Assembly: GCF_964204645.1 (NCBI RefSeq)
Contig: NC_134035.1
Coordinates: 372,001 to 436,000 of the forward strand
Reading direction: 5' to 3'
DNA length: 64,000 nucleotides
Origin: Tubulanus polymorphus
Taxonomy: Eukaryota; Animalia; Nemertea
This document shows, piece after piece, positions 8,207-55,724 of the stretch. The position numbers and the translations under genes were made by a program. The notes beneath the pieces are model-generated. The model did not search any database. It was not told where the DNA came from and saw only the letters and a list, made by a program, of their open reading frames with translations. How positions within the stretch are numbered: position 1 is the first letter of the stretch; every line of letters begins with the position of its first letter.

Positions 8207-10400
8207 TGGAACAAATTTTTATTGATAGGGTGGAGAATGGTCCGGAGGACATGAAAGAGGCCATAGACCACTTGAACCTTAGTCCCGTGTTGGACGACCA
8301 GCTGGCAGACCCCGTTCCAGCTGCTGCCTTCCCAGTTAGGCGGCCTAGGCAGCGGACCCTCCGGCAGCCGCACCCTGCTGCACAGAGGTGATCCCGTCGC
8401 GTGGACGGGCGGCTGTGGGAGGGGGAGTTACGGGAGGTAAGCATCATTTCAACATCAATGAGATTTGATATTGTACTAACCAGGTGGCGATCGCGTCACC
8501 GAAACCACCAGATGGCGATCCCACCATTTATGCCACCAGATGGAAATTTTATGCTTCATCAGCTAATAACGAAAATGTTGCAGCCGCCGTGATATTTCAA
8601 GGTAAGACATATTCGATTTTAATCAATTAAATCTCAACATCGTCGAGAAGAAAATGTAGCCCCTGATGCAGTCGCCGCTGATGCCACAGAAAATAGTAAG
8701 TCTACACATATTCATGATCCTATTTTAGATATGTCCGTTTGTAGCCAGACATTTTTGGTGGATGGGTTTATATATACTTATGTAAAAGTGGCAAATCTCA
8801 CTTGGCGGAACCAAGAATTCTAAATAAGAGCTGAAACGTTCATATTTTCAGTTGTACATATTGAATACACGCATACCAAGCGGTCCAGTTCCAGTTAAGA
8901 TTCGACTCAGTAGAGTTAAAACATCAAAACGAATTAATTCTATAACTAAATGATCGAAAATATCCATTTCGATTGTGATCAAATTGATAAGTTTAACTAG
9001 ATTCTCAAAGTTCACCAGATGGCGATCCCACCAGTTACGCCACCAGATGGCGATCCCACCAGTTATTACCAGATGGAAATTTTACGCTTCATTAGCTGAT
9101 AATGAAAATGTTGCGGCCGCCGTGACATCTTAGGACGTATTCAATTTTAATCAATTAAATCTTAACATCATGATTGTTATTATATTATAGGAAGAAAATG
9201 CAGCTCCTGCCGCTGCTGCAGTTGTCGCCGCACCTGCACCTGAGCCAGCCCGAAAAGGGCCCGCGTTGGTGCCGTGAAAGTAAGTTTGATTTGCGTCAAA
9301 TCATTTTAAGTTCGATAATCTGGGCAGGGTTTTATAGACCACATCATTTTCTCCTAGGGGTAAATCCTCAACCTTGGCCCGATTTCATAGACCGGGTTTC
9401 AATGTTGCCCCTAGCGGTAAATCCTCAACATAGGTGACAACCACCATTGTAACAATGATAAACTATGGTAATAACTGACAAATTTTTAAATGTTTCCATT
9501 TCGAACCACTTTTCAAGTGATTTTCGCGTCTCTGCACCCACAGTTCATGGTTATTCATGAAGACTTGACCATTATTTCCTGTTTTAAGTCATGTAGATTA
9601 TTATCATTGTGGTTCACCAATGATTATGAGGATATTTTATTGTTTTCAAAATTTGCATCGGAAAAAGAATTATCCCTGAATCTCTCTGGTCCTACCGAGC
9701 TATTCACATATAAGAATCCCTGAACCTTTCCAGTCCTACCGAGCTATTCACATATAGAATCCCTGAACCGAGCTATTCACATATAGAATCCCTGAATCTC
9801 TGGTCCTACCGAGCTATTCACATATAGAATCCCTGAACCTTTCCGGTCCTATAAAACCAAGTTATTCTGATACCGAATTCTCCAAACAGTAAGAAATCAT
9901 TTAATGTTTCGATGATTTAATCAATGTTGATCGTTTTGTTTTTTCCAGAGAGACGAGATACCGTTACGGCGTTCGCCGCAGCTCCGACGCCGTAGAGTAA
10001 GTTTGAATTGTTTACTGAGTTAGTGGTATTCCAGACCTGATAACGACTTTGAGAGTAGTGCCTACATTTTTATGAGCTTTGAAATATCAAAATACTTTCA
10101 AGATCACAATGATTTCTAGTTGTGGTTATTTTTCGATCTCTTTCATCTGAACCTTGGCTGTGGGAGGGGGAGTTACGGGAGGTAAGCATCATCTCAATTT
10201 GTTTATTTAACAATCATTGAAGAGATTAGGCGGAATATCGCCGTGGATCCGCGGTATTTAGTTAATTTTTTGACGCGATGTAAGTACAACTTTTTGCACT
10301 TATATTATACTCTCTACTTTCTCTTTTCACTGATCACATCATTTTTCATCCCCCGCTCGTGTTGAGATAAATATCCTCAACGTATATTGAATAAAGTACT
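8207..10400 (+). pseudogene. Inverted, rearranged pseudogene copy of the 3' part of the micro-exon gene
   Basis: 8207-8436 is an exon 41 paralog with TGG>TGA (8389-8391) and a 6-nt deletion. About 8647-8695 is an exon 40 paralog with a decayed acceptor. 9191-9279 is an exon 40/37 hybrid (89 nt, frameshifted). 9949-9996 is an exon 39 paralog (RDEIPLRRSPQLRRRR). 10157-10195 is a second exon-41 donor end. Flanking introns are also homologous. Confidence 0.8.
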
Positions 10401-15043: not shown

Positions 15044-15511
15044 CTACTCCCTGTACCCACGCCTAAACAAGACCGATTTTAAATCATGTAAAAGAGCCTT
15101 TGATCTATCCGAAGATAGAAGCTCCTCCCACGGTCCCACGGAACCGCGAGCCACCACCCGCACTTCGGCGCGGCATCGGTCGCTGGACAGAACTCTGTCC
15201 AGCGCCGAAACCGGGGCAGCGGCCAACGGCTCCACGGGGGCAGGAGGAACCCCTCTTACCTCCTCAACCTCCACGACCATCTCCTCTTCTACCAGTTCCG
15301 GCTCCGGCTCCGGCTCCGGGACCGGTTCAAACACCGGTTCCGGTTCCGGCTCCGGCTCCGGCACCGGCACCGCCTCCACCACCTCCGGAACTACCACGAC
15401 GCCGATCTCCTCCCCTCCGCCACCGCGTCGCTCCCCCTCGGGAGGCGCCACACCACCGCGACGAACCGCCGGACGGCGTCGTCTTCGATGCCGAGCGGTG
15501 CGCGTGCCCGT
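15044..15511 (-). CDS. Terminal coding exon (42) of the micro-exon gene: TGTRTARHRRRRRP...(PE)n...LLHDLKSVLFRRGYRE*
   Basis: GC-rich ORF after the acceptor ttttttttgcag, in phase 0 with exon 41; matches ORF 15044..15535. Confidence 0.85.
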   Translation of the reverse strand, partial: TGTRTARHRRRRRPAVRRGGVAPPEGERRGGGGEEIGVVVVPEVVEAVPVPEPEPEPEPVFEPVPEPEPEPELVEEEMVVEVEEVRGVPPAPVEPLAAAPVSALDRVLSSDRCRAEVRVVARGSVGPWEELLSSDRSKALLHDLKSVLFRRGYRE

Positions 15512-16932
15512 CTGCAAAAAAAAGAAAACATTCATTTACTAAATGATCGGTTGAAAAGTGATTTTTTACAGAAAATTTTCGGATCAGTAACCGAGCTGAA
15601 ATAATGGAACAATTGATTACATATAAACAAAGAGATAAATCGTCGCGATCTGGGAAACAATATTCTAAAGGGTTAGAAAATAAAGCAAAAAAAAAAATGA
15701 CGATGGCTCGCTGAAAATGAAAGTATTATTTAAGAAAAGATATTATAAGTGATTCATAAAAACTGTTCGTGTGAGAGAAATTCATTCGAAATCAAAACTG
15801 AGAGAAATATAAAAAAAACAGTTAATGTTGAGATGATGCTTACCTCCCGTAACTCCCCCTCCCACAGCCGCCCGTCCACGCGACGGGACCACCTCTGTGC
15901 AAGAGGGTGCGGCTGCCGGAGGGTCCGCTGCCTAGGGCGCCTATCCGGGGAGGCAGCAGCTGGAACGGGGTCTGCCAGCTGGTCATCCAAGACAGGACCA
16001 AGGTTCAAGTGAAAGAGGTCTATGGCCTCTTTCACGTCCTCCGGACCATCCTCCACCGTCTCAATTAATATTGGTTCCACTGTAAAATATAAAATAGAAA
16101 GAAATACATTAACAATCAGGAGAAACAATTAATATATCAAGGGCGGATCCAGTCCCCCGCCTTTAATATCTTGAGGTGCCCTCGAGATATTTTAGGAATT
16201 TCTTTTTCCATTTTATAAAGAAATATCAAGTATTCCCTCATGATGGCTATCGAATAGCCTCGGGCAACAAAATTTCAAAATTTTCTGGGGAGAAACACTT
16301 AAGACCCCTTTCATCCCTTCACGAGTGCTCATGTGCCCTTCAGTAAACCTTCCAAAAATCCTGGCTCAGCCCTTGTAGATTTACAGTGAACCCAGTGTAG
16401 CTAGTAATCTCATTAATACAAAATGGTTGACTTTCCACTTGAAGCGTGATTGGTTGCCAATAATTTGTGACATCATCATGCAGCAGAATGGGGGATGCGG
16501 AAAGAAGACAATATGAGTCTCGATGAGTGACATTGATGGGCTGGTTGAGAGTTTAGGTTTGTCGGGACAGGGTTACTACAGTACAGCACAGAAGTAACTA
16601 AACATTGTATCATTGTATTGTTCAGTCACATGAACAAATAAATAGGTGTCATACCATCAGCGAACCATCACTTAACCATCAGGTGAACCCCTGCCATAAC
16701 CGCAAACCATGATTCATGATGATTTGAAAATAATTCTAAATGGTAGGCATGGAAACTTGTTAAAATTGATGGTTTATTCAGACCGCGCGGTATCACTGGT
16801 CGTATTTAAACCAAATTTGATGCGGTATGTGTTTAAAACAATGAGCGACATATGGTATATGGAGTATATTACTTCATGCCTTGCCAAACACTAATTACTT
16901 ACTCACCAAATCACTCAATTAACCTGTTCTTA

Positions 16933-17019
<87 letters not shown>

Positions 17020-20000
17020 TTTTAGTCAATATCTCACACCTGACGATGATCTCTAGGGTGAGATCGAAACGTCGTGTTCTTATGTTTTAGATTGTTTCCA
17101 TAAATAAATTCTCGATTTTAGAATTCTTTTAATTTGTAAATAAAGTTGGTTTTTATCTTATTAACCCTTTCAGTGCTGACTGATCAATACCCTATAGTGC
17201 TGGAGATAATTTGAAAATTTTGAAAAATTCCACCCAAGTGTGTTGAATAACGGGAATAGCACTACAGTGCGTCTACACCACGGCGCGGTGTATCGTTAGT
17301 TACTGATATTTCACGATGTGTCTGAAAATGGTTGACGCCGCACGAAAATAAATAGGCTTTTGTTATACAGAATTCTGTTGTAAACAGAAAGGGAACAATG
17401 ATCTCGTTTTTCGATTTCAATTATTTCTAGGATGTACCGTCAATAAGACCCGGGGCTTGATGAGGCAGTGGCTGCGTTACTGTGGCAAGCGAGGATCAGC
17501 TAGTGGTTACTCCTCAATTACCGTGCTTCAATTTCGTCGACACTTCCCGATTGAACTGTAGCCGACTCATCGCTTTATCAATACGCGAAAGTTCACGATT
17601 GGTAGAACACTTTATCCGTGTTGACGCGATGAGGAGAGAATCCCACAATGATAATAAAAAGTCCGAAAATGAAACTTCGAGATAGTAGTTTATTTCAACG
17701 TTTTGACTATATCCTAATAGTCATCTTCAGGAATAATTCCTGATTATTCCTGAAGATGACTATTAGGATATAGTCGAAACGTTGAAATAAACTACTATCT
17801 CGAAGTTTCATTTTCGGACTTTTTATTATCATTGTGGGATTCTCTCCTCAACGTGAAAGTTGCTCGAACAAAAATTCGTTTGATTATATTTGAATTTTGT
17901 AAGCGAAAATCGAGTTCGAAAATAAACTAATTTCATCGCGTATCAACGAGTGTACCAGTACCTTATTCAATGTACGTTGAGGATACTTATCTCAACACGA
18001 GCGGGGGGGGGGGGGATGAAAAATGATGTGATCAGTGGAAAGAGAGAGGAGAGAGTATAAATGCAAAAAGTTGTACTTACATCGCGTCAAAAAATTAAGT
18101 AGATACCGCGGATCCGCGGCGATATTCCGCCTTATCTCTTCGATGACTGTAAAATAAATAAATGAGAAAAATTATTAGTATTTCATTAAATCATGGACGA
18201 TCAATAGGAGTTTTACGACGTGGACAATACAGTCAAAGTCCGTTATACTGCCGCCATACTCCATCAGGAGTGACATGATTTTGGGCATTTTAACGTGCTG
18301 GATCCAGTTCCACAAATGAGTTAACTCTGAACTCATAATCTAGTTCTACATTTGCGAGAGTTAACTCTGAACTCAGAATCTAGTTCTACATTTGCGAGAG
18401 TTAACTCTGAACTCAGGATCCAGTTCCACAGATGAGTTAGATTTAACTCTGAACACAGAATCCAGTGCTACAGTTACGAGTTAAAGTTAACTCTGAACTC
18501 AGGATCCAGTTCTACAGTTACGAGTTAAAGTTAACTCTGAACTCGGGATCCAGGACCCAGTTCCACAGTTGTGAGTTACAGTTAACTAAATTAATCATCA
18601 GTTATCAACAGTAAGGCGCTCAGTAACATCTTTCATATTTCTGTTCAAATCAGAGACAAATTCAGTATTTCTTGTCATAAAATAGTAACAAATACCGAAA
18701 ATCAGTAACAGTTTGGGCAGCTCTGCTAAAAATGTCTGGCTACAAACGGACATATCTAAATAGGATCATGAATATGTGTAGACTTACCATTTTCCGTCGC
18801 ATCGACGGGGGCGGCATGGGCGGCAGCTGCATTTTCTGCCTATAATATAATAACAATCATGATGTTAAGGTTTAAGAAAACAACAAAAAAATTTGTCAAA
18901 ATTTATGCAGTTTTTACTAGCGTTTCGATAACACGAATCGTAATTAGAGAGATAATGGGGCCAATTCCCTATATGAAATCAAAAGCTGAAATAGAGCCTG
19001 CAAACAAGAGCATTTCAAGAGCTCAACTAATGCAGCGCAAAGTTTCCAAACAAACCAAGAAATCACAATTTCAAAGTTTTTTTTGATTTCTCTTTATAGT
19101 ACATTCGCCGTTTATGTATAGCAGTTCCGGTCCATTGGATAATCCTTTCATCATCGCTTTAATGAAATTTGAACAGTAGGGAACTGGCACGCCAGCTATC
19201 CCTTCAGATGGCACCGCTTAGGTATGTGAGACAATCTAATGGGACAGAAAGTGAATTTCAGAGACGTCGTCTGCGCGACAAAAAGTCGTCAAATTAGAGC
19301 ATCGATATTTTTTCGCGCATCTCTTATTGTATTAATAGTGAGCACTGGATCATATCATTACGGTTAAAAATACCTGACAATTTGATATCTCTAATTTGAG
19401 TAGTTTTCACCTGAATATATGACAGCGCAAGGGCTCTAATATCAAAAATGGTAGTTGAAAAAGAAATAACCACAACTAGAAATCATTGTGATCTTGAAAG
19501 TATTTTGATATTTCAAAGCTCTTAAAATGGAGGCACTACTCTCAAAGTCGTTATCAGGTCTGGATCGGAATACCACTAACTCAGTAAACAATTCAAACTT
19601 ACTCTACGGCGTCGGAGCCGCGGGGAGCGCCGCAATTGCGGTATCTCGTCTCTCTGGAAAAAACAAAACGATCAACATTGATTAAATCATCGAAACATTA
19701 AATGATATCTTACTGTTTGGAGAGTTCGGTATCAGAATAAGCTCGGTAGGACCAGAGAGATTCAGGGATTCTATATGTGAATAGCTCGGTAGGACCTGCG
19801 AGGTTCAGGGATTCTACATGTGAATAGCTCGGTAGGACCTGCGAGGTTCAGGGATTCTACATGTGAATAGCTCGGTAGGACCAGCGAGGTTCAGGGATTC
19901 TATATGCGAATAGCTCGGTAGGACCAGAGAGATTCAGGGATTCTATATGTGAATAGCTCGGTAGGACCTGCGAGGTTCAGGGATTCTACATGTGAATAGC

Positions 20001-23000
20001 TCGGTAGGACCTGCGAGGTTCAGGGATTCTACATGTGAATAGCTCGGTAGGACCAGCGAGGTTCAGGGATTCTATATGCGAATAGCTCGGTAGGACCAGA
20101 GAGATTCAGGGATTCTATATGTGAATAGCTCGGTAGGACCAGAGATTCAGGGATTCTACATGTGAATAGCTCGGTAGGACCAGAGATTCAGGGATTCTAT
20201 ATGTGAATAGCTCGGTAGGACCAGAGATTCAGGGATTCTATGTGAATAGCTCGGTAGGACCAGAGATTCAGGGATTCTGTATGTCTTCCTGTTCATTGAC
20301 GTGTCAGTAATGATCAACACATTCAGTGTATTTGATGCATTATAATTATTTTCACTTATAGTTCAAACTTACATCAGCTTGCGGCGGCGGCGGCGGCGTC
20401 GCAGGTGTTTCAGTCTAAAAAGTAAAAAAACGATATTTCCATTGGTTATAAAAACATGAAAATGATTCATTTCAATTTAATATAATAAAACTTGGTTCCA
20501 CAGTTCAGGACCCAGTCCCACAGTTACAGAACCTGGCTCCGCAGTTCTGGACCCAGTTCCACAGTTTGAAGTTATGATCTAGTAAAGAGTTACCGATGCT
20601 GGATCCTAGTTTTCCAGCCAATGATATTCAGTTAGTTCCGTGCGATAGTCATCAAGCCGATTGTCATAAATTTCTAGATCTCTCCCTGTCCCGCCGCCCC
20701 AGAATTAGGTATTTTTACTTTTTTTTGGTTTCGATTTTTTGGTGCCACGAGATCCAAAGCAGAAGAATTCTACACTATTTTAATTCTTTTTCCGATGCAG
20801 ATTTTGAAAACAATAAAATATCCTCATAATCATTGGTGAACCACAATGATGATAATCTACAGGACTTAAAACAGGTCAATTTGTCAGTTTTTACCATAGT
20901 TTATCATTGTTACAATGGTGGTTGTCACCTATGTTGAGGATTTACCGCTAGGGGCAACATTGAAACCCGGTCTATGAAATCGGGCCACGGTTGAGGATTT
21001 ACCCCTAGGAGAAAATGATGTGGTCTATAAAACCCTGCCCAGATTATCAATAAACTTATTTGAAATTAGCTTCACTTAAAATGATTTGACTCAAATCAAA
21101 CTTACTTTAACCGGTCCGACGCGTGCCCGTTTAGGGCTAACGGGGTCCTATAAAATAAAAACAAGTTGAAATCAACATCCAGAATTTTCAAACATATTTC
21201 TGAAGGAAATCTCAATTTCAGATTATCTTAATAATCTTTGGTGAGCCACGAAAATGATAATCTACACAACTAAAAAATGGAAATGAATAACCATGAACTG
21301 CGGGTGCAGAAACGACAACACCACTTGCAAAAAGGGCTTCAACAAACTCTCCACAATCACAAGAGGCACGTACTACCATCGCGAAAATCTTCTGCCTTTT
21401 TTTCCATGCCCAAAATAGATGTTCAAGCCACTTGGAAAGTGGTTTTTTTCGCATCGACAAACTCTCGTCGCAATCACAAATCATACTTGTCGTAAGCTTA
21501 AACTTTCACAAGATCCCGTCGGCAGGCGGACAGACGGAGAGACAGGCGGACAGACGGAGAGACAGGCACACAGACGAACGGACTGTAAAATGATTTGATG
21601 AAATTCAAACTCACCGATGCCGGTACCTCGAGCTTCCTCTTCTATAAAATAAAAAATCAACTTTAGTTTAACAACGTCAACAAAAATTCAGACATATTTC
21701 ATCTGCAGTCGTTTGTGTTCAACTGTAAATTCAATAGAAATGTTCACAATATTTACCGGCACATTCACGCACGTGTGGAATTCATTTCTCTACATAAAAA
21801 GAAAAACAAGAGCTCAATTTAGCTCAATTTAAATGAAAATCAGAATAAATAATCTTAAATCTCGCATTTTTTTAATAGCTTGGTTGACAGGGTAGACTAT
21901 TGAAATATCATTTCGGAAAATTTAAAAAAAAAGAACTCGCTCAGCGCGATAAACACAGTTTTTGAAGGAAGAGGGAACGATCGATAGGGCAATATACATA
22001 TGTCCAAAACAATGATCCTTGGAAAGTTCGAATTCTGCACACAAATGTGATCAAAAAAAAGAATAAACGCGCGGTTTTCAATTTTTTCATCATTCAAGCC
22101 GGGATTCTCATTCGGCGAAGGTGAAAAACTTTTTTGCTCGTTTTCCACTGAATTTGTTCCACGATTGGGAGTAAAAAAAATTCTACTTTTGTTTGACTTT
22201 TCTTCAAATTTCGGGAGGCGGTTCCCGTAAACCAAGCTATTTAAGAAAAAGCCTCATCTGGTGAACCATCAAAAATAGTTATTATTACGTTATAGGTTGT
22301 TACTAATGATCGGATTTATGAGAACCACAACGGTATAGTGTACATTATGGAATAAAGTTCAAGTTTTTGTCAGTAGATGGCAGGCAGGTGGTATTTATTA
22401 AGTGACTGGGTGTCAACATGTGTAACTGAAATTGTCTATTGTAAACTTACGTCAATTTGCACAATACGCGCGATTTCCGATTCCTAGAAATGTAAAGAAA
22501 AAAAATTCTGAAATCAAGTTTTGAATAACTATACCACGGATGAAAGATTCCATGATCTAAATTCTTAGTTGACCCTCGATTTAGAGACTATTTTGAGGAT
22601 AATTGAACCGATGGATGCTGCGTGACATGATTTCAATATTCTACTAACTCGGTCTGAAGAATATTCACATCGATACAAAACTGTGACCGAGCCGCAACTT
22701 TTAAACATTCTTAGTTTCACTTAAAAACATTGCTTCACACTATTATCAATACCAATTTTACGAATAATATGAACTTGGTAAGATAAATATTCACATCGAT
22801 ACAAACTGTGACCGAGTGCGACTACTTTCAAACACTCTTTAGATATAACTGGCTTCAGCTGTGATTAATTTAGGACCGAAGATACTACTCTATATAGCTT
22901 AATCAGTAGCGGATCCAAACTAGATTCCATTGTATTCCCGAATATAGTCAGAATAACATTTTTTTTTTTTTAAGTAACTCGATCCAACAGAATGTCCCAG

Positions 23001-26000
23001 ATACAAGGAAATTAGAACATATTTCAAAATTTTTATTGGTTAGGACCCCTAAACTGCGGCAGCTGCAGCGGTCAGGCAAAAAATATCTTTAAGGAATATA
23101 GCCAAATTCACCAGTCCCCCACGGAACTGCCCCTAAGTAATGACTTTAGAATTGAACCCATGATACCGTATAGCGGCTGCAAACAGATCGGTCACAATTA
23201 CCAGTGTTTATGTTTTCCAACAACAAATAAGCTAGCAAAAACTAGGTGCCTTTAGCCTACGAGCAAAATTGGTCGTAGCTTTAGCCAAGTTTGACCTTGG
23301 TGGAGATATGCTATGGGATCTCATAGAACATGGATATTTCAGCAGGAAAATCAATATCAGATTATAATAATCTGGTGAACTACGAAAATAATTATCTTTT
23401 ACAACTTACGATAATGGTAGGAGCCTCGGGCTCCGGCGGCGGCGGCTCTGGGAAATCATCATTCTAGTAATCAAAATAACATGAAATATCATGAAAAATT
23501 CTAGCTAACCCTAAAAGCGAGTATATATGGAGCCACCCACTAATGAAAGGGATGGCTCCAAATTCACTGAGAACGAGTAGGCGATCAAAAGGATATTTAC
23601 CCAAAGGTCGTCGAATAAATTGATGTCCTATAAAAAAGAATACAAAAAATTTATTACGATAAAATGTACGTATGTTTTTGGTAAATGACACTTACTGATC
23701 ACAAGTGACATATGGTCACGATAGTATCACAATTGCTTGCCAGTGAGGCTAGGCGTTCACCAGAGCCAAGTTTCATAGATGTTGGGAAAAAATAATACCA
23801 GCTGGGATCATTTCGAAATTTTTCAGTTATTACCAAGGTTTTCATTATGAAGTTGTCACCTATGTTGAAGATTTACCTATAGGCAACCAACAGGGCTGCC
23901 AACCTCTGAAAAGTGCTATCAGTAACAAATTGTAATATGAAAATAAATGTTCAAATCAATCAGTAATCAACAGTAAGACCCTCAGTTAGATCTTTCATAC
24001 TTCTCATATGCATCGAACAAATCAAATCAGTATTTCTTGTCATAAAAGAGTAACAAATACCGAAAATCAGGAACAGTTGGCAACTCTGGGTAACATTGAT
24101 ATCCGGTTTACAAAATCGGGCTCAGGTTGAAGAAATACCTCCAGGGTATTATTGATATACAGTCTATGAAACAGGGCTAAGGTTATCAATATTTAACATC
24201 GATATCGAAAATGATTTAATGAAATTGAAACTTACCTCGTCACGCGGAATCTTCGGCGGGCTTACGGGTTGCTGTAAAATATTTTTAAAAAAGTTGAAAT
24301 CAACATTCAGAATTTTGATACACATTGATAATAATCTACACGACTTAAAACAGGAAATAATGGTCAAGTCTTCATGAATAACCATAAGCTGTGGGTTCAG
24401 AGACGTGAACATCACCGACCGACCGACCGACCGACCGACCGACCGACCGACCGACCGACCGACCGACCGACCGACCGACCGACCGACCGACCGACCGACC
24501 GACCGACCGACCGATTCAATGAGATTGCCAGGTTTTCTAGGACATTAGCACCCTTGAATTGCTGAACAATGCCTATACCACTGGCGATTGTGAGATCCTA
24601 TCTATGGACGAAAAGACAGATTGAAAGTAATAACGGGAGAACGATTCGATAGAATTCAAACTGACCTCGTCGACGGATCGGCGTCGCTTTCTGGTGACCT
24701 ATAAAATAAACGAGCAACATTTAGATTTAATCATTTTTCATTTTCAAGTTCATGATCACGTGTAGTTCGAACATGGAAAGCATTTCATGAGAGAAATTGA
24801 GTGGAGCCGATTTAAGACTGCGAGGAAAGATATCAGTAATGTCAGTGATGAGCGAAAACTAAAAACATGGCCAAAACTTACTTCTTTCGTTGTTGTTATT
24901 GTTTGTTTGCTCTGATGCCATGAAAGAAAAAAAGAGAATTAATTTTAGTTTTGTTATTTTATGTTCAGTAGCACACGTAGGTATCAATATACGTAATAAA
25001 TGAGTTCTAAGCGACGGATGCCTCGTTATAGATATTGTTTTGATTCTGTATCGTTATTTAATAAAACGAACAGGAGAATTTTTATGACTTTGTTCGGTAT
25101 GAAATACATTGGCTGTCAGATAGAAATGAACACGACAGAAAATCCATGATACAGAAAAATGCTGACTTACTTCCTTCGGTGCTGCTGCTGTTGGTTTCTG
25201 TTGCAATAAAAGAAAGAAAATTCAGTAAGTTTTTTTTTTTAATATTTCATATACAGCAGCAAACGTTAATAAACACAGTAGACATAAAAACTGGACAGGT
25301 TTATATAGATGTCTGTATCTGAAAAATGATTTTGATGTCATTAGCATAAATATCTTACATTAAGTTAAGTGCAATTCCTGAGTGCTAATGGATTAAAGTT
25401 GATGTTAAGACAGGATCATCTACGAGGGAATACACGGGAAACGAATGACGCTCAATTATAAAATTGAAACTTACTCGTGCAGGAATGGCCGCTACCGCTG
25501 CTGTTGCCGTTGGTGTTGGTTTCTGTTGCAATAAAAGAAAGAAAATTCAGTAAGTTTTTTTTTTTATATTTCATATTCAGCAGCAAACGTTAAACACAGA
25601 AGACACAAAAACTGGGCAGGTTTAATATCTGTGTCTGGAAATCGATGAAAATCGCAAAAAATAATTGCCCATAGGCCAAGAGGTTTACCACAGCCTTATG
25701 AAATGCTTATATCAGGTAACGAAATAGGGATGTAAAGTGTAAGGTGCGAGAAGTTTCGGTCTCGGTTAGAGAAATGAACGTTATCGCGGACCCAAGACAG
25801 AGCCGCTATACCGCGCCGTTCATCAGTCAGAATAGGACCGATTCCATCGCATCTCAGCTGCAGCCTCGGTACGGGAATTCAGAGCGTCGTTACGAAATGC
25901 GAGTTAAACACACCTACTTCCCACTTAACCCATTAGCACTCAAGCCGCCCGAATCCGCCCCGGTACTTTTTTTGTATCCTGCACAAAAACGGTTATAGTG

Positions 26001-32000: not shown

Positions 32001-35000
32001 TGCAAAATACTCCCTCTGCACTGGTTATCGCTACAGATTTTATCACTCTTAGAAGAAATGCCGCTTATTTTACATGAAAATGCAAGACCAGATCAAAGAT
32101 ATAAAACAAATTTGATGAGAAGATATCTCTTCTTGTTTTTGTTTTATGAATCTCTGAAAAACACGGAAATCCTGGCAAAACGCAGCATTGCCTGAAAAAT
32201 AGGCGTGGCAGGCAAAGAGTTACGAATGTTCTTCATTTATATTCCCGCTTTTTTTCTCATATACCCTAATTATTCACTCGCCTTAAGCCCGCCGCACCGG
32301 CATAACATTTGTTTCGCCAAAACATAAAACACACTTTTCAGAACACGTTTTGCCCACAAACAATAAAATGTTCAACGGACACGACATTTTGCTGTTCGGC
32401 GTTTTGTGTTTTGCCTTCCCCGCACACGGCATAACAAAAAACAGGCTTTAACCTCATGTACTAACACAATACAAATCATTTTCATCTCAAGTCTCAACAT
32501 ATTACAATTGATAACCAGCCAACAGAATGGATACATCTAAACTTACTTCGATGTCTGGGGACGCCAACGTGGACCTCGTTCCAGTGTGATGCTGTAAAAG
32601 AATAAAATTCATTAATACAAAGCCTAGGAATTGGTAAATCGACCATGGAAAACATCATCTTGTTTTGCAGAAAATCTACCAGGCGAAAGAAAAAAACGAG
32701 TCGGAATCTATTCAATCGTTGCGCTTATGAAAATCAGCACCAGTTTATGGGCATAAAAATGTGCGCCAAGAATTGAATTTGATGACCAATACAAATAAAC
32801 CAAAAATAGACAGGTTTGATATCTGTAACCGAACTGGATTTAGAGCCGCCTTTTTTCAGGTCAAAAACGATAAGTTACGAAGGGAATCGAACTCCGATTA
32901 AATTCTGTAACTTTGATGATAATTCTGACGAAAAACTCATAAGAATCGGTTGTTTCAAGGTAACAGAAGAATTTATACTTACTGCCTTTGCTGCTGTTTG
33001 TTTACGCTGATGATATGAAAGAAAAAAAGAGAATTCCTTTTAGTTTTGTTATTTCACGTTCACACGTTAAATACAGTAAATATAAATACATCAATAAGAG
33101 ATACATAAAATATATGCACATATATCCGTGAGCAAATGCTTCCAGATTTTACTGTGTGTGCTAATGTTATATAAAAGAAACTTGATATATAAAATAATTC
33201 TAAGTGACGGGAATTTATTTCATTGAAAGCAGGATTATTTTCATGACTTTGTTCCTGGTATGAAATATACGATGAAAATCACAAACAAATCATCGTCTGT
33301 CAGAAAGAAATAAACACCACAGAAATTCCATGATACAGAAAACTTCTCACTTACTTCTGGTGCTGTTGTTCTTGTCGTCGTCGAATTCTGTCGCAATAAA
33401 AAAAAAAGAGAATTCATGAATTTCTTGCATTATTTCATATTCAGTAGCAAACATTAAACACAGGAGATCATATTATAATTAAAACAAAAGACAAGTTTTA
33501 TATCTGTATTCGGGAAAAACCTCGATATTTCAGTATTCGTTTGTTTTAGGGTTTTATTTAAACAATATAAAGTCCATTAAACAGAAAAATTCAAACTTAC
33601 TGTATTCGTCGCTGTTTGTCTGTTCTGTTGCAATAAAAGAAAAGAGAATTCATTAATTTCTTGCATTAAAACTCTGATCTCTGTAACTTTGATATTTCTG
33701 TATTCGTTTGTTTTACAGTTTGATTCAAACGATATAGAGTCCATGAAACAGAAAAATTCAAACTTCTGTTGTCGTTGCTGCTGCTGCTGCTGCTGCAGCA
33801 GCAAACTGTCGCGATGAAAGAATAGTAATTAATTGCGTTGTTATTTCATATTGAGTAGCACACATTTAACAGAGATCATTATTAAAACGAATACCAGACA
33901 GGTTTAATATCTGGAAAAAAATTTCATCAGAGTAAACTTGTTACAATGAGAGAAAACCAAAAACACCACGCGATAAATCAGTTTGATAATTCCTGTTATC
34001 GGGATATTTGCACTTTAAAAATGACAATTGTAATTATCATCATTACTATTATCGTTGTTACTACGAGTATGATGATAATTATGAAAGACGAAATCAGTTA
34101 CAACTTGCTTAAAGAGTTATGAAGTTTCAATGACTCTCAGCGAAAATGGTAGATATCATATTCCACCGAGGAGATTAATAGAAAACTTACAAAATGAATT
34201 TCCGCTTCTACTGTTATCTAGAAAAGAGAATTAACATTCATATCTATAAAAATCATTCATTAAATGATCAATGAATCTAAGCACCAGTTTTATGGAGACC
34301 AATGTTTACTTTAATAAATCTGGGTTAACTTGATTAAAAGTGAATTCAGTTAACTGAGCACGGGTTAAACATAATACCAGTCTAACCGGCTTCAGAGGAC
34401 CAGGTTAAACAAAACAGGTTTACATAAAATGATATCATAAAATCTAAACTTACTGGCGGCGGAATTTCCTCCAGGACTTCTGGCTGTTAGAAAAGAACAA
34501 TAACATTCACATTCAGGTCAAAAACGATAAGTTATGAAGGGAATCAAACTCCGATTAAATTCTGTAATTTTGATGATAATTCTGTTGAAAAACTCATAAG
34601 AATCGGTTGTTTCAAGGTAACAGAAGAATTAATACTTACTGCCTTTGCTGCTGTTTGTTTACGCTGATGACATGAAAGAAAAAAAGAGAATTCATTTTAG
34701 TTTTGTTATTTCACGTTCACACGTTAAATACAGTAAATATAAATACATCAATAAGAGATACATAAAATATATGCACATATATCCGTGAGCAAATGCTTCC
34801 AGATTTTACTGTGTGCGCTAATGTTATATAAAAAAAACTTGATTATAAAATAATTCTAAGTGACGGGAATTTATTTCATTGAAAGCAGGATTATTTTCAT
34901 GACTTTGTTCCCGGTATGAAATATACGATGAAAATCACAAACAAATCATCGTCTGTCAGAAAGAAATAAACACGACTAGAAATTCCATGATACAGAAAAC

Positions 35001-38000
35001 TTCTCACTTACTTCTGGTGCTGTCGTTTTTGTCGTCGTCGTCGTCGTCGCTGAATTCTGTCGCAATAAAAAAAGAAGAGAATTCATGAATTTCTTGCATT
35101 ATTTCATATTCAGTAGCAAACATTAAACACAGGAGATCATATTATAATTAAAACAAGAGACAAGTTTTATATCTGTATTTGGAAAAACCCTGAAATTTCT
35201 GTATTCGTTTGTTTTAGGGTTTTATTTAAACAATATAAAGTCCATTAAACAGAAAAATTCAAACTTACTGTATTCGTCGCTGTTTGTCTGTTCTGTTGCA
35301 ATAAAAGAAAAGAGAATTCATTAATTTCTTGCATTAAAACTCTGATCTCGGTAACTTTGATATTTCTGTATTCGTTTGTTTTACAGTTTGATTCAAACGA
35401 TATAGAGTCCATGAAACAGAAAAATTCAAACTTCTGTTGTCGCTGCTGCTGCTGTTGCAGCAGCAAACTGTCGCGATGAAAGAATAGTAATTAATTGCGT
35501 TGTTATTTCATATTGAGTAGCACACATTTAACAGAGATCATTATTAAAACAAATACCAGACAGGTTTAATATCTGGAAAAAGATTTCATCAGAGTAAACT
35601 TGTTACAATGAGAGAAAACCAAAAACACCACGTGATAAATCAGTTTGATAATTCCTTTCATCGGGATATTTGCACTTAAAAAATGACAATTGTAATTATT
35701 ATCATTACTATTATCGTTGTTACTACGAGTTTGATGATAATTATGAACTATATGCGCAAATATAAGCGTATGTGTAAGTGAGCGCGCACACAAACTGAAG
35801 ACGAAATCAGTTACAACTTGCTTAAAGAGTTATGAAGTTTCAATGACTCTCAGCGAAAATGGTAGATATTATATTCCACCGAGGAGATTAATAGAAAACT
35901 TACAAAATGAATTTCCGCTTCTACTGTTATCTAGAAAAGAGAATTAACATTCATATCTATAAAAATCATTCATTAAATGATCAATGAATCTAAGCACCAG
36001 TTTTATGGAGACCAATGTTTACTTTAATAAATCTGGGTTAACTTGATTAAAAGTGAATTCAGTTAACTGAGCACGGGTTAAACATAATACCAGTCTAACC
36101 GGCTTCAGAGGACCAGGTTAAACAAAACAGGTTTACATAAAATGATATCATAAAATCTAAACTTACTGGCGGCGGAATTTCCTCCAGGACTTCTGGCTGT
36201 TAGAAAAGAACAATAACATTCACATTCAGGTCAAAAACGATAAGTTATGAAGGGAATCAAACTCCGATTAAATTCTGTAATTTTGATGATAATTCTGTTG
36301 AAAAACTCATAAGAATCGGTTGTTTCAAGGTAACAGAAGAATTAATACTTACTGCCTTTGCTGCTGTTTGTTTACGCTGATGACATGAAAGAAAAAAAGA
36401 GAATTCATTTTAGTTTTGTTATTTCGTTCACACGTTAAATACAGTAAATATAAATACATCAATAAAAGAGATACATAAAATATATGCACATATATCCGTG
36501 AGCAAATGCTTCCAGATTTTACTGTGTGCGCTAATGTTATATAAAAAAAAATTGATATATAAAATAATTCTAAGTGATGGGAATTTATTTCATTGAAAGC
36601 AGGATTATTTTCATGACTTTGTTCCCGGTATGAAATATACGATGAAAATCACAAACAAATCATCGTCTGTCAGAAAGAAATAAACACCACAGAAATTCCA
36701 TGATACAGAAAACTTCTCACTTACTTCTGGTGCTGTTGTTCTTGTCGTCGTCGAATTCTGTCGCAATAAAAAAAAAAAAGAGAATTCATGAATTTCTTGC
36801 ATTTTTTCATATTCAGTAGCAAACATTAAACACAGGAGATCATATTATAATTAAAACAAAAGACAAGTTTTATATCTGTATTCGGAAAAACCCTGAAATT
36901 TCTGTATTCGTTTGTTTTAGGGTTTTATTTAAACAATATAAAGTCCATTAAACAGAAAAATTCAAACTTACTGTATTCGTTGCTGTTTGTCTGTTCTGTT
37001 GCAATAAAAGAAAAGAGAATTCATTAATTTCTTGCATTAAAACTCTGATATCTGTAACTTTGATATTTCTGTATTCGTTTGTTTTACAGTTTGATTCAAA
37101 CGATATAGAGTCCATGAAACAGAAAAATTCAAACTTCTGTTGTCGTTGCTGCTGCTGCTGCTGCTGCAGCAGCAGCAGCAGCAGCAAACTGTCGCGATGA
37201 AAGAATAGTAATTAGTTGCATTGTTATTTCATATTGAGTGGCACACATTTAACAAAGATCATGATTAAAACGAATACCAGACAGGTTTAATATCTGGAAA
37301 AAGATTTCATCAGAGTAAACTTGTTACAATGAGAGAAAACCAAAAACACCACGCGATAAATCAGTTTGATAATTCCTTTTATCGGGATATTTGCACTTTA
37401 AAAATGACAATTGTAATTATCATCATTACTATTATCGTTATTACGAGTTTGATGATAATTATGAACTACATGCGCAAATATAAGCGTATGTGTAAGTGAG
37501 CGCGCGCACAAACTGAAGACGAAATCAGTTACAACTTGCTTAAAGAGTTATGAAGTTTCAATGACTCTCAGCGAAAATGGTAGATATCATATTCCACCGA
37601 GGAGATTAATAGAAAACTTACAAAATGAATTTCCGCTTCTACTGTTATCTAGAAAAGAGAATTAACATTCATATCTATAAAAATTATTCATTAAATGATC
37701 AATGAATCTAAGCGCCAGTTTTATGGAGACCAATGTTTACTTTAATAAATCTGGGTTAACTTGATTAAAAGTGAATTCAGTTAACTGAGCACGGGTTAAA
37801 CATAATACCAGTCTAACCGGCTTCAGAGGACCAGGTTAAACAAAACAGGTTTATATAAAATGATATCATGAAATCTAAACTTACTGGCGGCGGAATTTCC
37901 TCCAGGACTTCTGGCTGTTAGAAAAGAACAATAACATTCACATTCATTAGAATTATTTGAAAAATAAGCATCTGGGGGCGGTTGCACGTCAATCGAGACT

Positions 38001-38468
38001 TAAGTCCGAAAGTGGTCTTAAATCTTAAGACTGGTCTTAAGTTGTTAGATTGGCTATAGAACCAAGTTGGTCTTAGACTGATCTTAAGTCTAAGCCCTGA
38101 CTATGGAACGGGCCCCAGAAAATGTTTCAGTTTTGAATATTGATTGTAACATCAAATGATAATCGGTCCCGGGTTCAATTCCACATTTAATTCAATATTA
38201 TATATAATATCTGTATCCTGGATGGTTAGTGAGGTGTAGTGGACGGTATCTTTGATGGGTTGGTATGAACGCCAACACCAGGGGGAGTGGGGGCGGGGGA
38301 TTTAAATCTAGCTCCGATATATCAATGAAATAGTGCGCACTATCTCAAAAATATCGATGACGTAGTGCACATCTACTCAGGTAAGTATACTAGGTATCAA
38401 TGTAGATACAGACATATTATTGGAACAAAAAAATGAATACTTACTATCTGCTTTCGTTTTGGAGCCAT
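15044..38468 (-). CDS. Micro-exon gene: 42 coding exons, about 746 aa, low-complexity A/T/K/P/R/E-rich putative nuclear protein with one KH-like module
   Basis: Each exon has a polypyrimidine-AG acceptor and a GT donor on the minus strand. In order: 38445-38472 (MAPKRKQI, ATG at 38468), 37885-37914, 37622-37648, 37135-37188, 36972-36995, 36725-36757, 36353-36376, 36167-36196, 35904-35930, 35432-35467, 35269-35292, 35012-35056, 34640-34663, 34454-34483, 34191-34217, 33764-33805, 33601-33624, 33355-33387, 32983-33006, 32547-32591, 29074-29154, 28587-28706, 27809-27835, 27682-27708, 27387-27449, 26805-26852, 26478-26513, 25475-25522, 25171-25197, 24882-24911, 24666-24698, 24236-24271, 23410-23463, 22451-22483, 21757-21789, 21615-21641, 21106-21147, 20373-20414, 19603-19653, 18788-18839, 15844-16079, 15044-15511 (stop). 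Exons 2-39 are all multiples of 3 and stop-free. The 52-nt exon 40 (phase 1) is exactly compensated by the 236-nt exon 41. Total 2241 nt. Confidence 0.85.
15844..16079 (-). CDS. Exon 41 of the micro-exon gene (VEPILIETVEDGPED...LWEGELRE)
   Basis: Acceptor attttacag, donor GAG|gtaagc; GC-rich; a paralogous copy at 8207-8436 has the same boundaries. Confidence 0.85.
16138..16375. mobile_element. hAT-like MITE
   Basis: CAAGGGCGGATCCAG...CTGGCTCAGCCCTTG; flanks TATAT/TAGAT. Confidence 0.6.
16934..17015. repeat. (TA)n microsatellite
   Basis: Direct reading. Confidence 0.98.
17036..17077 (+). ncRNA. Penelope-type minimal type I hammerhead ribozyme
   Basis: ACAC-CTGACGA-T-GATCTC-tagggt-GAGATC-GAAA-C-GTC-GTGT: conserved core, 6-bp stem II, palindromic ACGT stem III, GUC cleavage triplet, ACAC/GTGT stem I. 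Followed by AATAAA and adjacent to (TA)n. Confidence 0.75.
17630..17850. mobile_element. Head-to-head inverted Penelope pLTR fragment (108-bp arms, 5-bp spacer)
   Basis: 17630-17737 is the reverse complement of 17743-17850 except at one base; each arm carries the hammerhead motif. Confidence 0.75.
17745..17790 (+). ncRNA. Penelope-type minimal hammerhead ribozyme in the right arm of a palindrome
   Basis: TTC-CTGAAGA-T-GACTAT-taggat-ATAGTC-GAAA-C-GTT-GAA followed by AATAAA. Confidence 0.65.
18300..18590. repeat. Degenerate ~40-bp repeat (GAGTTAACTCTGAACTCAGGATCCAGTTCYACA)
   Basis: About 6 copies; the related GGAYCCAGTTCCACAG motif recurs at about 20500 and 42525. Confidence 0.8.
19735..20280. 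repeat. 39/41-bp intronic minisatellite, about 13 copies
   Basis: GAATAGCTCGGTAGGACC...TTCAGGGATTCTAYATGT; a shorter inverted copy lies at about 9675-9850 in the pseudogene. Confidence 0.95.
23891..24088. mobile_element. hAT-like MITE
   Basis: CAGGGCTGCCAAC...GTTGGCAACTCTG; absent from the paralogous intron at about 20950. Confidence 0.6.
24415..24514. repeat. (CCGA)n microsatellite
   Basis: Direct reading. Confidence 0.98.
25925..26388. mobile_element. piggyBac-like MITE
   Basis: TTAA-CCCATTAGCACTCA ... TGAGTGCTAATGGA-TTAA; an orphan right end lies at about 25368-25396. Confidence 0.75.
28587..29154 (-). CDS. Exons 21-22 (29074-29154, 28587-28706): degenerate KH-like module
   Basis: EIETVFELKLGTSLRASFQKTLTRKHP|QVMVDLPRVHAIVVVRGPKVAVDNCYEYAHELRDRLVAQE. 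The VVVRGPKVAVD-helix segment resembles the C-terminal strand-G-helix of type I KH folds; no GXXG loop. Confidence 0.55.
29612..30103. mobile_element. hAT-like MITE with 6-bp TSD
   Basis: CAGAGTTGCCACT...AGTGGCAACACTG flanked by TATATT on both sides. Confidence 0.75.
30590..30864. mobile_element. hAT-like MITE
   Basis: TIR CATAGGCGTCCCC / GGGGACGCCTATG; flanks AAAAC/AGAAC. Confidence 0.7.
31147..31345 (+). mobile_element. tRNA-derived SINE
   Basis: A box TGGCCAAGTGG and B box GGTTCAAACCC; no closed acceptor stem. Confidence 0.6.
32857..37945. repeat. Tandem triplication of a ~1.7-kb unit, each carrying 6 micro-exons
   Basis: Units start at caggtcaaaaacgataag (32857, 34514, 36227); near-identical introns; the leftmost unit lacks a ~56-bp segment. 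Confidence 0.95.
37974..38117. mobile_element. Short palindromic Harbinger-like MITE
   Basis: GGGGGCGGTTGCA...TGGAACGGGCCCC ends; internal CTTAAG repeats. Confidence 0.45.
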
Positions 38469-39813
38469 ATTTCTAGAAAACAAAATAGAGACATCATAAA
38501 CATTTGAGCGACGACACTTATCATCATTTGAAAATTGGCATATCGATTGTAAACAAATCCGCCAGATGACAGATCTGTAATCAGTCAGTGCTATGGAGGG
38601 TAGCCCTTGGGTTTTAATAGAAACAATTTCAGAGACAACACATTAACAACTTTCGTCAACGAATTCCCTTGAGAATCATCTGTATCAACCAGTTACAGAT
38701 GATTCTCAAGGGAATTCGCTGACGAAAGTTGCACTTGGTAAATACACAAAATATAAATGAATTACCCAAATATTTCCTTGATTTTAGGAAAATTTCCGAA
38801 ATTTATTTTTGGAAATATTTCCAAACTAGGAATTATCATTTCAAAATTCCAAAGTTTTTCCCAATTTCCGCGTTCTGTGGGAACCATGAGTATGCCTGTT
38901 TATCTAAGTGCTGAGGTGGAATTTTTTAAATCTTACATCTCCAGCACTTTCGAGTATTGATTAGTTCAATGAAATGCTTAACGCACCTTAAAATTTCAAC
39001 AAAATATTTTGTTTAGGGTTTCATTCAGTAAACCATCAGGCCATACATGCAGTTCAACAGTTTTGGACGCAATGGGATACCGGCAAGGCTAATGAATGAA
39101 TAAGACCCTAAAGATATTTTCTGTTGAAGACATTTTGAGGGCACCAACGATTCCCTACCATTTTTCATTACCAGTTGAAATTTGGTTTATTTCAGAATGT
39201 TTTAAATCTAAAAAACTGATCAAGAAATGTGGAACTGGGGGGTCCAGAACGGTGGAACTGGATCCTGATAGCCGCTTTAAATGAAATCTTTTTGACATTT
39301 TTGTTGAAGAAATTAAATTTGTGTAGGGTGCCAAAAATCCCAGATCAGTTATCCAAAGTAATACACACTAAATTTTTTATTTTCGTGTTTAAACTTTTCT
39401 CAACTTGGTCTCAACAGGACCAGTGAAACTGTATAGTCCAGATAAACCATCGTTTCTATATCCATCTGACACTGTTTTCAAAGGATTGTCAAAAAATCGT
39501 CTTTAACTGATTTGAATCAGAGAAAAGAGACTCCATTTTATGAACTAAATAAATTTTAACAATATGTTCCATGCCTACCATTTTAAATTATTTTCAAACC
39601 ATCAAGAATCATATTTCAGAGGCATGGAAACACAAGAAACATTTTGTTAGAATTTCAAAAATGGCTGATCTTTTGTAATTGCAACATGAGAAAATGAAGA
39701 CTTTTTGGCAATTCTTCAATATGGTGTAAAGTGGATGTAAATACAACTGTTTATTCAGACTGCACATTTTCACTCTGGTCGTATCGAGACCAAATTGAGG
39801 TGTTTTCAAAAGT

Positions 39814-53120: not shown

Positions 53121-53173
53121 TTAGTTAGGGGTCATAGTAGTTAGTTATCTAGTAGTAGTTAGTTGCTCTTCTC

Positions 53174-55724
<2,551 letters not shown>

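What the first reader, a model, noticed from the sequence alone, without database searches (positions are those of the whole stretch)
15044..38472. Hidden 42-exon micro-exon gene with nearly all-symmetric phase-0 exons, encoding an apparently nuclear protein
Seen: 38 exons of 24-63 nt (8-21 aa), each with canonical splice signals. Exons 2-39 are all multiples of 3, phase 0 and stop-free, and the single phase-1 junction (exon 40/41) closes the frame exactly, giving 746 aa. Known: arrays of symmetric micro-exons define the MEGs of schistosomes, which encode secreted proteins diversified by exon skipping. Inference: this is a MEG-like gene with no signal peptide and many basic NLS-like clusters. 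Any subset of exons 2-39 could be skipped in frame, so it may produce a combinatorial set of nuclear disordered isoforms. Standard gene finders would likely miss most of it.
Basis: partly seen in the sequence, partly recalled or inferred. Interest (0 to 1): 0.95.

Follow-up and report, generated by a model that had tools for sequence, protein, structure and literature searches.

The report
Multi-copy micro-exon gene, disordered protein
This is a real protein-coding gene built from about 40 tiny in-frame exons; it exists in about ten near-identical copies plus some forty distant relatives in this genome and encodes an orphan, mostly disordered, probably nuclear protein, but whether its exons are mixed and matched by splicing could not be tested.

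Summary
Forty exons are 24-66 nt, and exons 2-39 are all phase 0 and multiples of three. 33 of 42 donors read GTAAGT.

It is a coding gene, not chance:
- The opposite strand gives 3 such candidate exons against 36.
- Four full-length paralogous copies (94-98% identical, introns included) all keep an intact frame.
- 34 of 36 exon indels are multiples of three, against 35 of 192 in introns.
- pN/pS is 0.32-0.49 in the predicted frame and 0.69-1.36 in shifted frames.

New here:
- The gene sits in a segmental repeat (amplicon) of at least 45 kb, present about ten times near the ends of three contigs.
- It has about 40 diverged paralogues in 33-45 kb tandem arrays.
- No homologue was found in 1.84 billion representative proteins, Pfam or PDB.

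The schistosome MEG comparison fits the architecture only. There is no signal peptide and the protein is far longer. No RNA data could be reached, because the runs found were DNA. Splicing itself and combinatorial skipping are therefore untested. The H3-tail likeness is not above composition.

The scan has already flagged paralogous copies of this gene on other DNA of the same genome.

The parts
38445..38468 (-). Exon 1 as modelled: start codon, MAPKRKQI (24 nt). An acceptor AG lies 4 nt upstream of the ATG, so at least one non-coding 5' exon probably lies further upstream.
   Evidence: identical in 4/4 paralogous copies
32983..37914 (-). Three tandem copies (about 1.72 kb each) of a six-micro-exon cassette, exons 2-19. 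Each cassette holds PEVLEEIPPP (30 nt), ITVEAEIHF (27), a poly-Ala exon F(A)nTTTE (36-54 nt, weak GTTTGA donor), NRQTATNT (24), NS(T)nAPE (33-45) and RKQTAAKA (24). Exon coordinates are listed.
   Evidence: the C8 copy has only two cassettes
32547..32591 (-). Exon 20, 45 nt, HHTGTRSTLASPDIE
28587..28706 (-). Exon 21, 120 nt, phase 0, not low-complexity (QVMVDLPRVHAIVVVRGPKVAVDNCYEYAHELRDRLVAQE). It lies inside what otherwise looks like a 5-kb intron.
   Evidence: 6 synonymous against 3 non-synonymous codon changes in the C8 copy
27682..27835 (-). Exons 22-23: 27835-27809 TLKEKRKME and 27708-27682 RERKKKALE (27 nt each)
24882..27452 (-). Exons 24-29, Ala/Thr/Pro/Lys-rich micro-exons ending in ..IPAR or ..KE: 27452-27387, 26855-26805, 26513-26478, 25522-25475, 25197-25171, 24911-24882. 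Their lengths differ between paralogues, always by multiples of 3. Exon 26 is absent from the two C9 copies.
19603..24698 (-). Exons 30-39, unrelated micro-exons of 27-54 nt: 24698-24666 VTRKRRRSVDE, 24271-24236 QPVSPPKIPRDE, 23627-23601 DINLFDDLW, 23463-23410, 22483-22451, 21789-21757, 21641-21615 KRKLEVPAS, 21147-21106 DPVSPKRARVGPVK, 20414-20373, 19653-19603 RDEIPQLRRSPRLRRRR
18788..18839 (-). Exon 40, 52 nt, phase 0 to 1 (AENAAAAHAAPVDATEN).
   Evidence: lengths in the copies are 52 or 46, the same class mod 3
18081..18146 (-). Exon 41, 66 nt, phase 1 to 1 ((V)IEEIRRNIAADPRYLLNFLTR)
   Evidence: all four changes seen between copies are synonymous in this frame (read by eye)
15844..16079 (-). 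Exon 42, 236 nt, phase 1 to 0. It is conserved at 46-57% amino-acid identity in the distant subfamily, with the same exon end (..G.L.E|gtaag).
15044..15511 (-). Exon 43, the last coding exon: 155 aa plus stop at 15046-15044. In order it holds a basic run (RHRRRRRP), an acidic (PE)n run, and a conserved C-terminal helical segment of about 55 aa ending ..LLxDLKxxLxxxGY.
8207..10400 (+). Inverted, scrambled partial copy of the gene's 3' exons with their introns. It carries a TGG>TGA stop in the exon-42 copy. It travels with the gene in every copy of the large repeat (amplicon).

Best explanation
The region holds one member of a lineage-restricted, amplified protein-coding gene family.

Shown:
- A 43-exon gene on the minus strand has about 64% of its coding sequence in 40 symmetric micro-exons of 24-66 nt.
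- The array grew by tandem duplication of exon-plus-flank modules and of a six-exon cassette. The exons then changed length by whole codons.
- The gene lies in a segmental repeat (amplicon) of at least 45 kb, present about ten times near the ends of three contigs.
- At least five copies keep intact frames of 680-757 aa under moderate purifying selection.
- About 40 more distant paralogues form 33-45 kb tandem arrays. They share only the last two exons and their splice phases.

Inferred:
- The product is a largely disordered protein rich in Ala, Pro, Glu, Thr and Arg. It has no secretion signal, several basic clusters that look like nuclear localisation signals, Ser/Thr-Pro sites and a short helical C-terminal module.
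- It most likely acts in the nucleus as a multivalent scaffold or binding partner. Its length and module number are tuned genomically, by exon and cassette gain and loss between copies.
- Because almost all splice signals are near-consensus, I expect mostly constitutive splicing. The three weak-donor poly-Ala exons are the likeliest optional ones.
For: - Strand-specific excess of strong phase-0 micro-exons: 36 against 3.
- One uninterrupted 752-aa frame over 43 exons.
- Four full-length paralogues align over the whole 23 kb at 94-98% identity. Each keeps an intact frame with 37-43 exons, and AG/GT is kept at all but three sites.
- Exon indels are multiples of 3 in 34 of 36 cases, against 35 of 192 in introns.
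- pN/pS is 0.32-0.49 in frame and 0.69-1.36 out of frame. There are 58 synonymous and 66 non-synonymous distinct codon changes.
- Copy number and the distant arrays. Extent of the amplicon.
- The distant subfamily keeps the exon-42/43 boundaries and the C-terminal motif.
- Composition, lack of an N-terminal hydrophobic stretch and basic clusters.
- Only C-terminal helices are predicted.
- Contigs from independent DNA runs are colinear with the window, so the assembly is sound here.
Against: - There is no transcript evidence at all. The runs that hold the locus are DNA, and the one possible RNA run holds next to none of it. Splicing of the micro-exons is inferred from sequence and evolution only.
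- Nuclear localisation rests on motif patterns, not on a predictor or an experiment. The protein is overall neutral (pI about 7).
- Function is unknown: there were no hits in Pfam, PDB, the Atlas or 1.84 billion representative proteins.
- Trinucleotide repeats inside exons would favour indels of 3n even without selection.
- Exons diverge about twice as fast as their flanks, which is unusual for a constrained gene.
Confidence: 0.75

Rival explanations
1. MEG-like diversity generator. Because exons 2-39 are all phase 0, the cell skips subsets of them and makes a combinatorial set of nuclear isoforms from each copy.
For: - All 38 internal exons are symmetric.
- Paralogues that lack a whole cassette or single exons still keep the frame, so the protein tolerates exon loss.
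- Three exons have weak GTTTGA donors.
Against: - 33 of 42 donors are GTAAGT, and acceptors have strong pyrimidine tracts. This is the mark of efficient constitutive recognition.
- No RNA data could be obtained.
- Symmetry follows automatically from growth by duplication of phase-0 modules.
Confidence: 0.2
2. Histone H3-tail mimic array. Junction peptides such as ..PAR|TKPTAAAA, ..PAR|KPT.. and RKQTAAKA imitate H3 residues 1-27, and the protein titrates readers or writers of the H3 tail.
For: By eye, NRQTATNT / ..TTAPE / RKQTAAKA line up in order with the genome's own H3 tail, [24 protein letters not shown] (H3 read).
Against: The best local alignment of the H3 tail to the modelled protein scores 37. 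Composition-preserving shuffles give a mean of 34 (SD 4.2), and 24% reach the observed score. The likeness is therefore explained by shared Ala/Thr/Lys/Arg/Gln composition.
Confidence: 0.07
3. Secreted or extracellular Thr/Ala/Pro-rich (mucin-like) protein whose true start and signal peptide lie in an unseen upstream exon.
For: An acceptor AG lies 4 nt upstream of the ATG, so there is an upstream exon. Thr/Pro/Ala-rich runs resemble O-glycosylated linkers.
Against: - In the distant subfamily the ATG sits 3 nt after the equivalent acceptor, not 4. An upstream reading frame is therefore not conserved, and the ATG is the likely start.
- There are many Arg/Lys clusters and an acidic (PE)n run.
- There are almost no cysteines (0.4%).
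Confidence: 0.05
4. Non-functional repeat: the frame is a by-product of trinucleotide-rich amplified DNA and is not expressed as protein.
For: - Many exons are built of GCA/GCT/ACG/ACA repeats that slip by 3 nt.
- The locus lies in repeat-rich DNA near contig ends and has a broken inverted partial copy.
- There is no expression evidence.
Against: - Non-repetitive exons also show an excess of synonymous change. One 51-nt exon has 7 synonymous codon changes, and one 120-nt exon has 6 of 9.
- Frames are intact in five copies despite 2-5% divergence.
- Amino-acid and splice-phase conservation with paralogues only 37-57% identical.
Confidence: 0.03

Closest known systems
Schistosome micro-exon genes (MEGs)
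   Same: Most of the coding sequence lies in very short symmetric exons whose lengths are multiples of three. They are separated by introns of 100 nt to a few kb and flanked by ordinary exons. Both are multi-copy, lineage-restricted and hard for gene finders (MEG description: PMC10526429).
   Different: MEG proteins always carry a signal peptide, are secreted, are at most about 190 aa and have 10-20 exons, often of 15 nt. This gene has no signal peptide, encodes 752 aa from 43 exons of mostly 24-54 nt, and has basic clusters of the nuclear type. No sequence relation was found.
Phase-0 repeat-exon genes for extended or disordered proteins (fibrillar collagen 54-nt exons, titin PEVK exons), from established knowledge, not tested here
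   Same: Arrays of symmetric short exons grew by tandem exon duplication. Each exon encodes one low-complexity module.
   Different: There is no Gly-X-Y or PEVK periodicity. The exons are shorter and heterogeneous, and the protein is not predicted to be extracellular or sarcomeric.
Ampliconic gene families in large segmental or palindromic repeats (for example on sex chromosomes or in subtelomeres), from established knowledge
   Same: - About ten copies at 94-100% identity inside repeat units of at least 45 kb.
- An inverted partial copy travels with each unit.
- Sequence exchange between the gene and its inverted partner.
   Different: Chromosome type, germline expression and any drive or conflict role are unknown here.

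Membership tests
Schistosome-type micro-exon gene (MEG) | Bulk of the coding sequence in symmetric exons of 6-81 nt whose lengths are multiples of three | tested here: met
   40 of 43 exons are 24-66 nt (1435 of 2259 coding nt, 64%). Exons 2-39 are all 3n and phase 0.
Schistosome-type micro-exon gene (MEG) | N-terminal signal peptide; secreted product | tested here: not met
   The N-terminus MAPKRKQIPEVLEEIPPP.. is charged, with mean hydropathy about 0 over the first 30 residues. No dedicated predictor was available.
Schistosome-type micro-exon gene (MEG) | Small protein (at most about 190 aa) from 10-20 exons | tested here: not met
   752 aa and 43 exons, against the description in PMC10526429.
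Schistosome-type micro-exon gene (MEG) | Protein variation by skipping of micro-exons in transcripts | not testable with these tools
   The only runs found that hold the locus are DNA contigs.
Ampliconic / segmentally duplicated gene family | Several near-identical copies embedded in large repeat units | tested here: met
   9-10 copies at 96-100% amino-acid identity in the last two exons. Colinear at 94-98% nucleotide identity over 23 kb. Flanks are co-duplicated over at least 45 kb.
Ampliconic / segmentally duplicated gene family | Inverted repeat partner with sequence exchange between the arms | tested here: met
   Each copy has an inverted partial copy about 7.6 kb away. In the window, exon 39 and its downstream intron match the partner at 9882-10095 and not the other gene copies.
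Histone H3 tail mimic | Similarity to the H3 N-terminal tail beyond what composition gives | tested here: not met
   Smith-Waterman score 37 against a shuffle mean of 34 (SD 4.2); 24% of shuffles reach it.
Any described protein domain family | Significant profile match | tested here: not met
   Pfam gave nothing over cut-off for the three largest 3' exons. PDB gave nothing. There were 0 hits at E<=0.001 among 1.84 billion representative proteins with a profile of the last exon.

The most novel reading that the evidence does not exclude
An amplified family of non-secreted, nuclear disordered proteins uses a MEG-like all-symmetric micro-exon array as a diversity engine at two levels. The first is exon and cassette gain, loss and patchwise sequence exchange between the roughly ten genomic copies. 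The second is in-frame exon skipping in transcripts. This would be the first such system outside secreted parasite proteins.
Probability: 0.12. Interest if true: 0.8.

Novelty: new variant of a known kind. Interest (0 to 1): 0.55.

Why it matters
If transcripts confirm the model, this is a micro-exon gene architecture so far linked to secreted parasite proteins, found here in an orphan, probably nuclear protein family that is also amplified in large repeats. It is a clean natural example of how a long disordered protein is built and resized by duplication of phase-0 exon modules. It is also a warning for annotation: such genes, and their roughly 50 relatives in this genome, are likely to be missed or fragmented. 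The paralogue comparison used here (indel mod-3 classes, frame-specific pN/pS, intact frames) validates such models when no RNA data exist.

Tried and rejected
- RNA evidence. The look-up of sequencing runs gave three runs whose word shares looked like spliced RNA (0.67-0.80). Read laying on 24520-30519 showed them to be genomic contigs colinear through introns, with no splice joints. The 2015 'RNA?' run holds next to nothing.
- Processed retrocopy as a record of splicing. The copy at 8207-10400 keeps its introns, so it is a genomic partial duplicate, not a retrocopy.
- Homology. Pfam, PDB by sequence, a profile search of 1.84 billion representatives, the ESM Atlas (best 0.87, below the level of a lead) and an exact look-up of the last-exon ORF all gave nothing.
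- Structure. The AlphaFold model of the last exon has mean pLDDT 55.7. That is too poor for a fold search, so none was run.
- H3-tail mimicry. Not above composition.
- Exon-restricted hyper-divergence as something exotic. For exon 39 it is a mosaic shared with the inverted partner that also includes the downstream intron. For the other hot exons it remains unexplained.
- Literature searches for micro-exon genes in cnidarians or for nuclear proteins found nothing relevant.
- The joined (spliced) protein was never sent to any search, fold or look-up tool. Exons were searched one by one by reference. The joined model was used only inside local scripts, for frame bookkeeping, composition and the shuffle test.


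Full report
**What is in the sequence**

The window is AT-rich eukaryotic DNA (GC 0.31-0.45 in the region). It contains short GC-rich islands that, read on the minus strand, are bounded by pyrimidine-tract-AG and GTAAGT.

A script that lists AG..GT segments with strong signals, a length divisible by three and no stop found 36 on the minus strand of 15000-38500. It found 3 on the plus strand, and 2-3 per strand in 21 kb elsewhere in the window.

Chaining these, and adding four weaker-scoring exons that are perfectly conserved in paralogues, gives 43 exons and 2259 coding nt. That is 752 aa with a single stop at 15046-15044.

- The start codon is at 38468 (MAPKRKQI).
- Exons 2-39 are all phase 0.
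- Forty exons are 24-66 nt and carry 64% of the coding sequence. The others are 120, 236 and 468 nt.
- 33 of 42 donors are GTAAGT.
- Introns are 100-955 nt, except two of 2.0 and 3.8 kb.
- Exon GC is 0.56 against 0.354 in introns.

The main difference concerns phase. With the strongest acceptors there are two phase-1 junctions, around the 66-nt exon 18146-18081, instead of one.

Twelve micro-exons are recent duplicates, because a six-exon cassette is repeated three times between 37914 and 32983. Several others share older exon-plus-flank modules, seen in the acceptor and donor flanks. About 20 have unrelated flanks and are still all symmetric.

**Is it a gene? Transcript evidence**

Transcript evidence could not be obtained. 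The three runs that hold the locus turned out to be genomic contigs that run straight through introns, and a possible RNA run holds almost none of it. Those contigs do confirm the assembly.

**Is it a gene? Evidence from paralogues**

Searching the window's own genome with the two largest 3' exons was the turning point.

- The gene exists in 9-10 copies at 96-100% amino-acid identity, on C11 (seven), C9 (two) and C8 (one).
- About 40 further copies are 45-57% identical and lie in regular 33-45 kb arrays on C6, C3 and C8.
- All of these loci lie within about 3 Mb of a contig end.
- Flanking DNA on both sides is co-duplicated, so the repeat unit (amplicon) is at least 45 kb.

I fetched four full-length copies. 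They are colinear with the window gene over 23 kb at 94-98% identity, introns included. I aligned them. Four results speak for coding constraint.

- Every copy keeps an uninterrupted frame (680-757 aa, 37-43 exons), and AG/GT is retained at all but three sites.
- 34 of 36 distinct indels inside exons are multiples of three, against 35 of 192 in introns. In one search every exon in every copy keeps its length class mod 3.
- pN/pS is 0.32-0.49 in the predicted frame and 0.69-1.36 in the two shifted frames. There are 58 synonymous and 66 non-synonymous distinct codon changes.
- Non-repetitive exons carry the signal too. Exon 19653-19603 has seven synonymous codon changes and one replacement. The 120-nt exon has six synonymous changes out of nine.

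The distant subfamily keeps the exon-42 donor, the exon-43 acceptor and a C-terminal motif, EV.VVAR...G.WEE.L.S.....LL.DLK..L...GY. Its first coding exon also starts M-P-K just after an acceptor.

Chance, or a non-coding repeat, is thus excluded for practical purposes. What is not shown is splicing itself.

**What it encodes**

The modelled protein is rich in Ala (16%), Pro (11%), Glu (11%), Thr (10%) and Arg (10%). It has pI about 7 and GRAVY -0.59. It has no N-terminal hydrophobic stretch.

Its recognisable features are:
- basic clusters: PKRK at the N-terminus, RKRRR, KRAR, RRRR and RRRRR;
- three S/T-P-x-K/R sites;
- an acidic-aromatic DINLFDDLW exon;
- a (PE)n acidic run.

AlphaFold on the last exon, using the small paralogue alignment, gives low confidence (mean pLDDT 55.7). 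It predicts only four helices, in residues 98-150.

Nothing matches in Pfam, PDB, the ESM Atlas or a profile search of 1.84 billion representative proteins. The family is an orphan as far as these libraries reach.

I tested this against the genome's own H3. The score is not above that of composition-matched shuffles (24% of shuffles reach it).

**How it most likely works**

Shown:
- The array was built by tandem duplication of phase-0 exon modules and cassettes.
- It keeps changing by whole-codon slippage and by exon or cassette gain and loss between copies. The C8 copy has two cassettes. The two C9 copies lack exon 26. Poly-Ala, poly-Thr and Ala/Thr exons range from 33 to 66 nt.

Inferred:
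- The product is a nuclear, intrinsically disordered, multivalent protein with a small conserved C-terminal interaction module.
- Its dosage, or its variety, is supplied by gene amplification.
- Because almost all splice sites are near-consensus, I expect constitutive inclusion of most micro-exons. The three exons with GTTTGA donors are the best candidates for optional exons.

**An oddity**

Exons differ about twice as much between copies as their 150-nt intron flanks do (4.8% against 2.9% for the C8 copy, and about 2% against 1% for the other three). The excess is concentrated in a few exons.

For exon 39 the cause is visible. In the window copy, the 3' part of the exon and at least 95 nt of the downstream intron match the inverted partial copy at 9882-10095, not the other gene copies. 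This is a recombination or conversion mosaic between the gene and its inverted partner.

For exons 21, 25, 31 and 37 no donor was identified.

**Comparison with the known**

The architecture matches schistosome MEGs: short symmetric exons in multiples of three, introns of 100 nt to 5 kb, and difficulty for annotation (PMC10526429). Membership fails on three points: signal peptide, size and exon number. No sequence relation was found. It works like a module-duplication gene of the collagen or PEVK type and sits in an ampliconic setting.

Notes of this scan on other windows of the same genome describe the paralogous copies: s1-492695 (41 exons, 1.6 Mb away) and s1-500185 (33 exons on another contig). 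They also list many other micro-exon genes. The architecture is therefore common in this genome, and this finding is not unique to the window. Those notes also hint, unverified, that the organism is a cnidarian. Its name is coded in the tools, and I did not establish it.

**Limits**

- No RNA data were available.
- There was no signal-peptide or NLS predictor.
Only single exons were searched, by reference.

**Verdict**

This is a real gene in a new, amplified orphan family with MEG-like architecture but a non-secreted product. I rate it of moderate interest.

Noticed in passing
window 8207-10400 (+): Inverted, exon-scrambled partial copy of the gene's 3' end that keeps intron sequence. It carries TGG>TGA in the exon-42 copy. 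An equivalent partner accompanies every copy of the large repeat in the genome.
   Followed up: partly
window 19500-19720 (-) against 9882-10095 (+): Exon 39 and its downstream intron in the window copy match the inverted partner (93%), not the orthologous stretch of other gene copies. This is a conversion or recombination mosaic between the arms.
   Followed up: yes
window exons 28706-28587, 26855-26805, 24271-24236, 21147-21106: These exons differ between near-identical paralogues several times more than their 150-nt intron flanks, for example 7/36 against 1/98 and 1/150. Many of the changes are synonymous. No cause was found.
   Followed up: partly
G000 C6 0.65-1.75 Mb, C3 0.42-1.33 Mb, C8 15.1-16.3 Mb (L021-L031): About 40 nearly identical members of a distant subfamily lie in tandem arrays with a 33-45 kb period. 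The gene there has fewer small exons but the same last two exons. All family loci lie within about 3 Mb of contig ends.
   Followed up: partly
window 53163-55727: About 2.5 kb of (CCAT/CCAC)n microsatellite. It gives false long ORFs on both strands and a GC skew of -0.79.
   Followed up: no
window 17660-17850: Perfect inverted repeat of about 190 nt inside the intron between exons 41 and 42. I did not check this.
   Followed up: no
window 30120-30519 and 27120-27319: Very high-copy repeats inside introns, with summed contig depth up to about 100,000 in the DNA runs. Loose ends read like a tRNA-derived element (GGGATTCGAACCC..).
   Followed up: no
window 24898 (exon 29) and 25094 (intron): All three DNA runs carry a 3-nt insertion inside exon 29 and a 2-nt insertion in the next intron, relative to the window. 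The exon variant equals the one in the paralogous copies, so cross-mapping from paralogues cannot be excluded.
   Followed up: no
window 19735-20284 and 9690-9850: A 43-nt tandem repeat (13 copies) lies in the intron upstream of exon 39. A shorter array of the same unit lies in the inverted partner.
   Followed up: no
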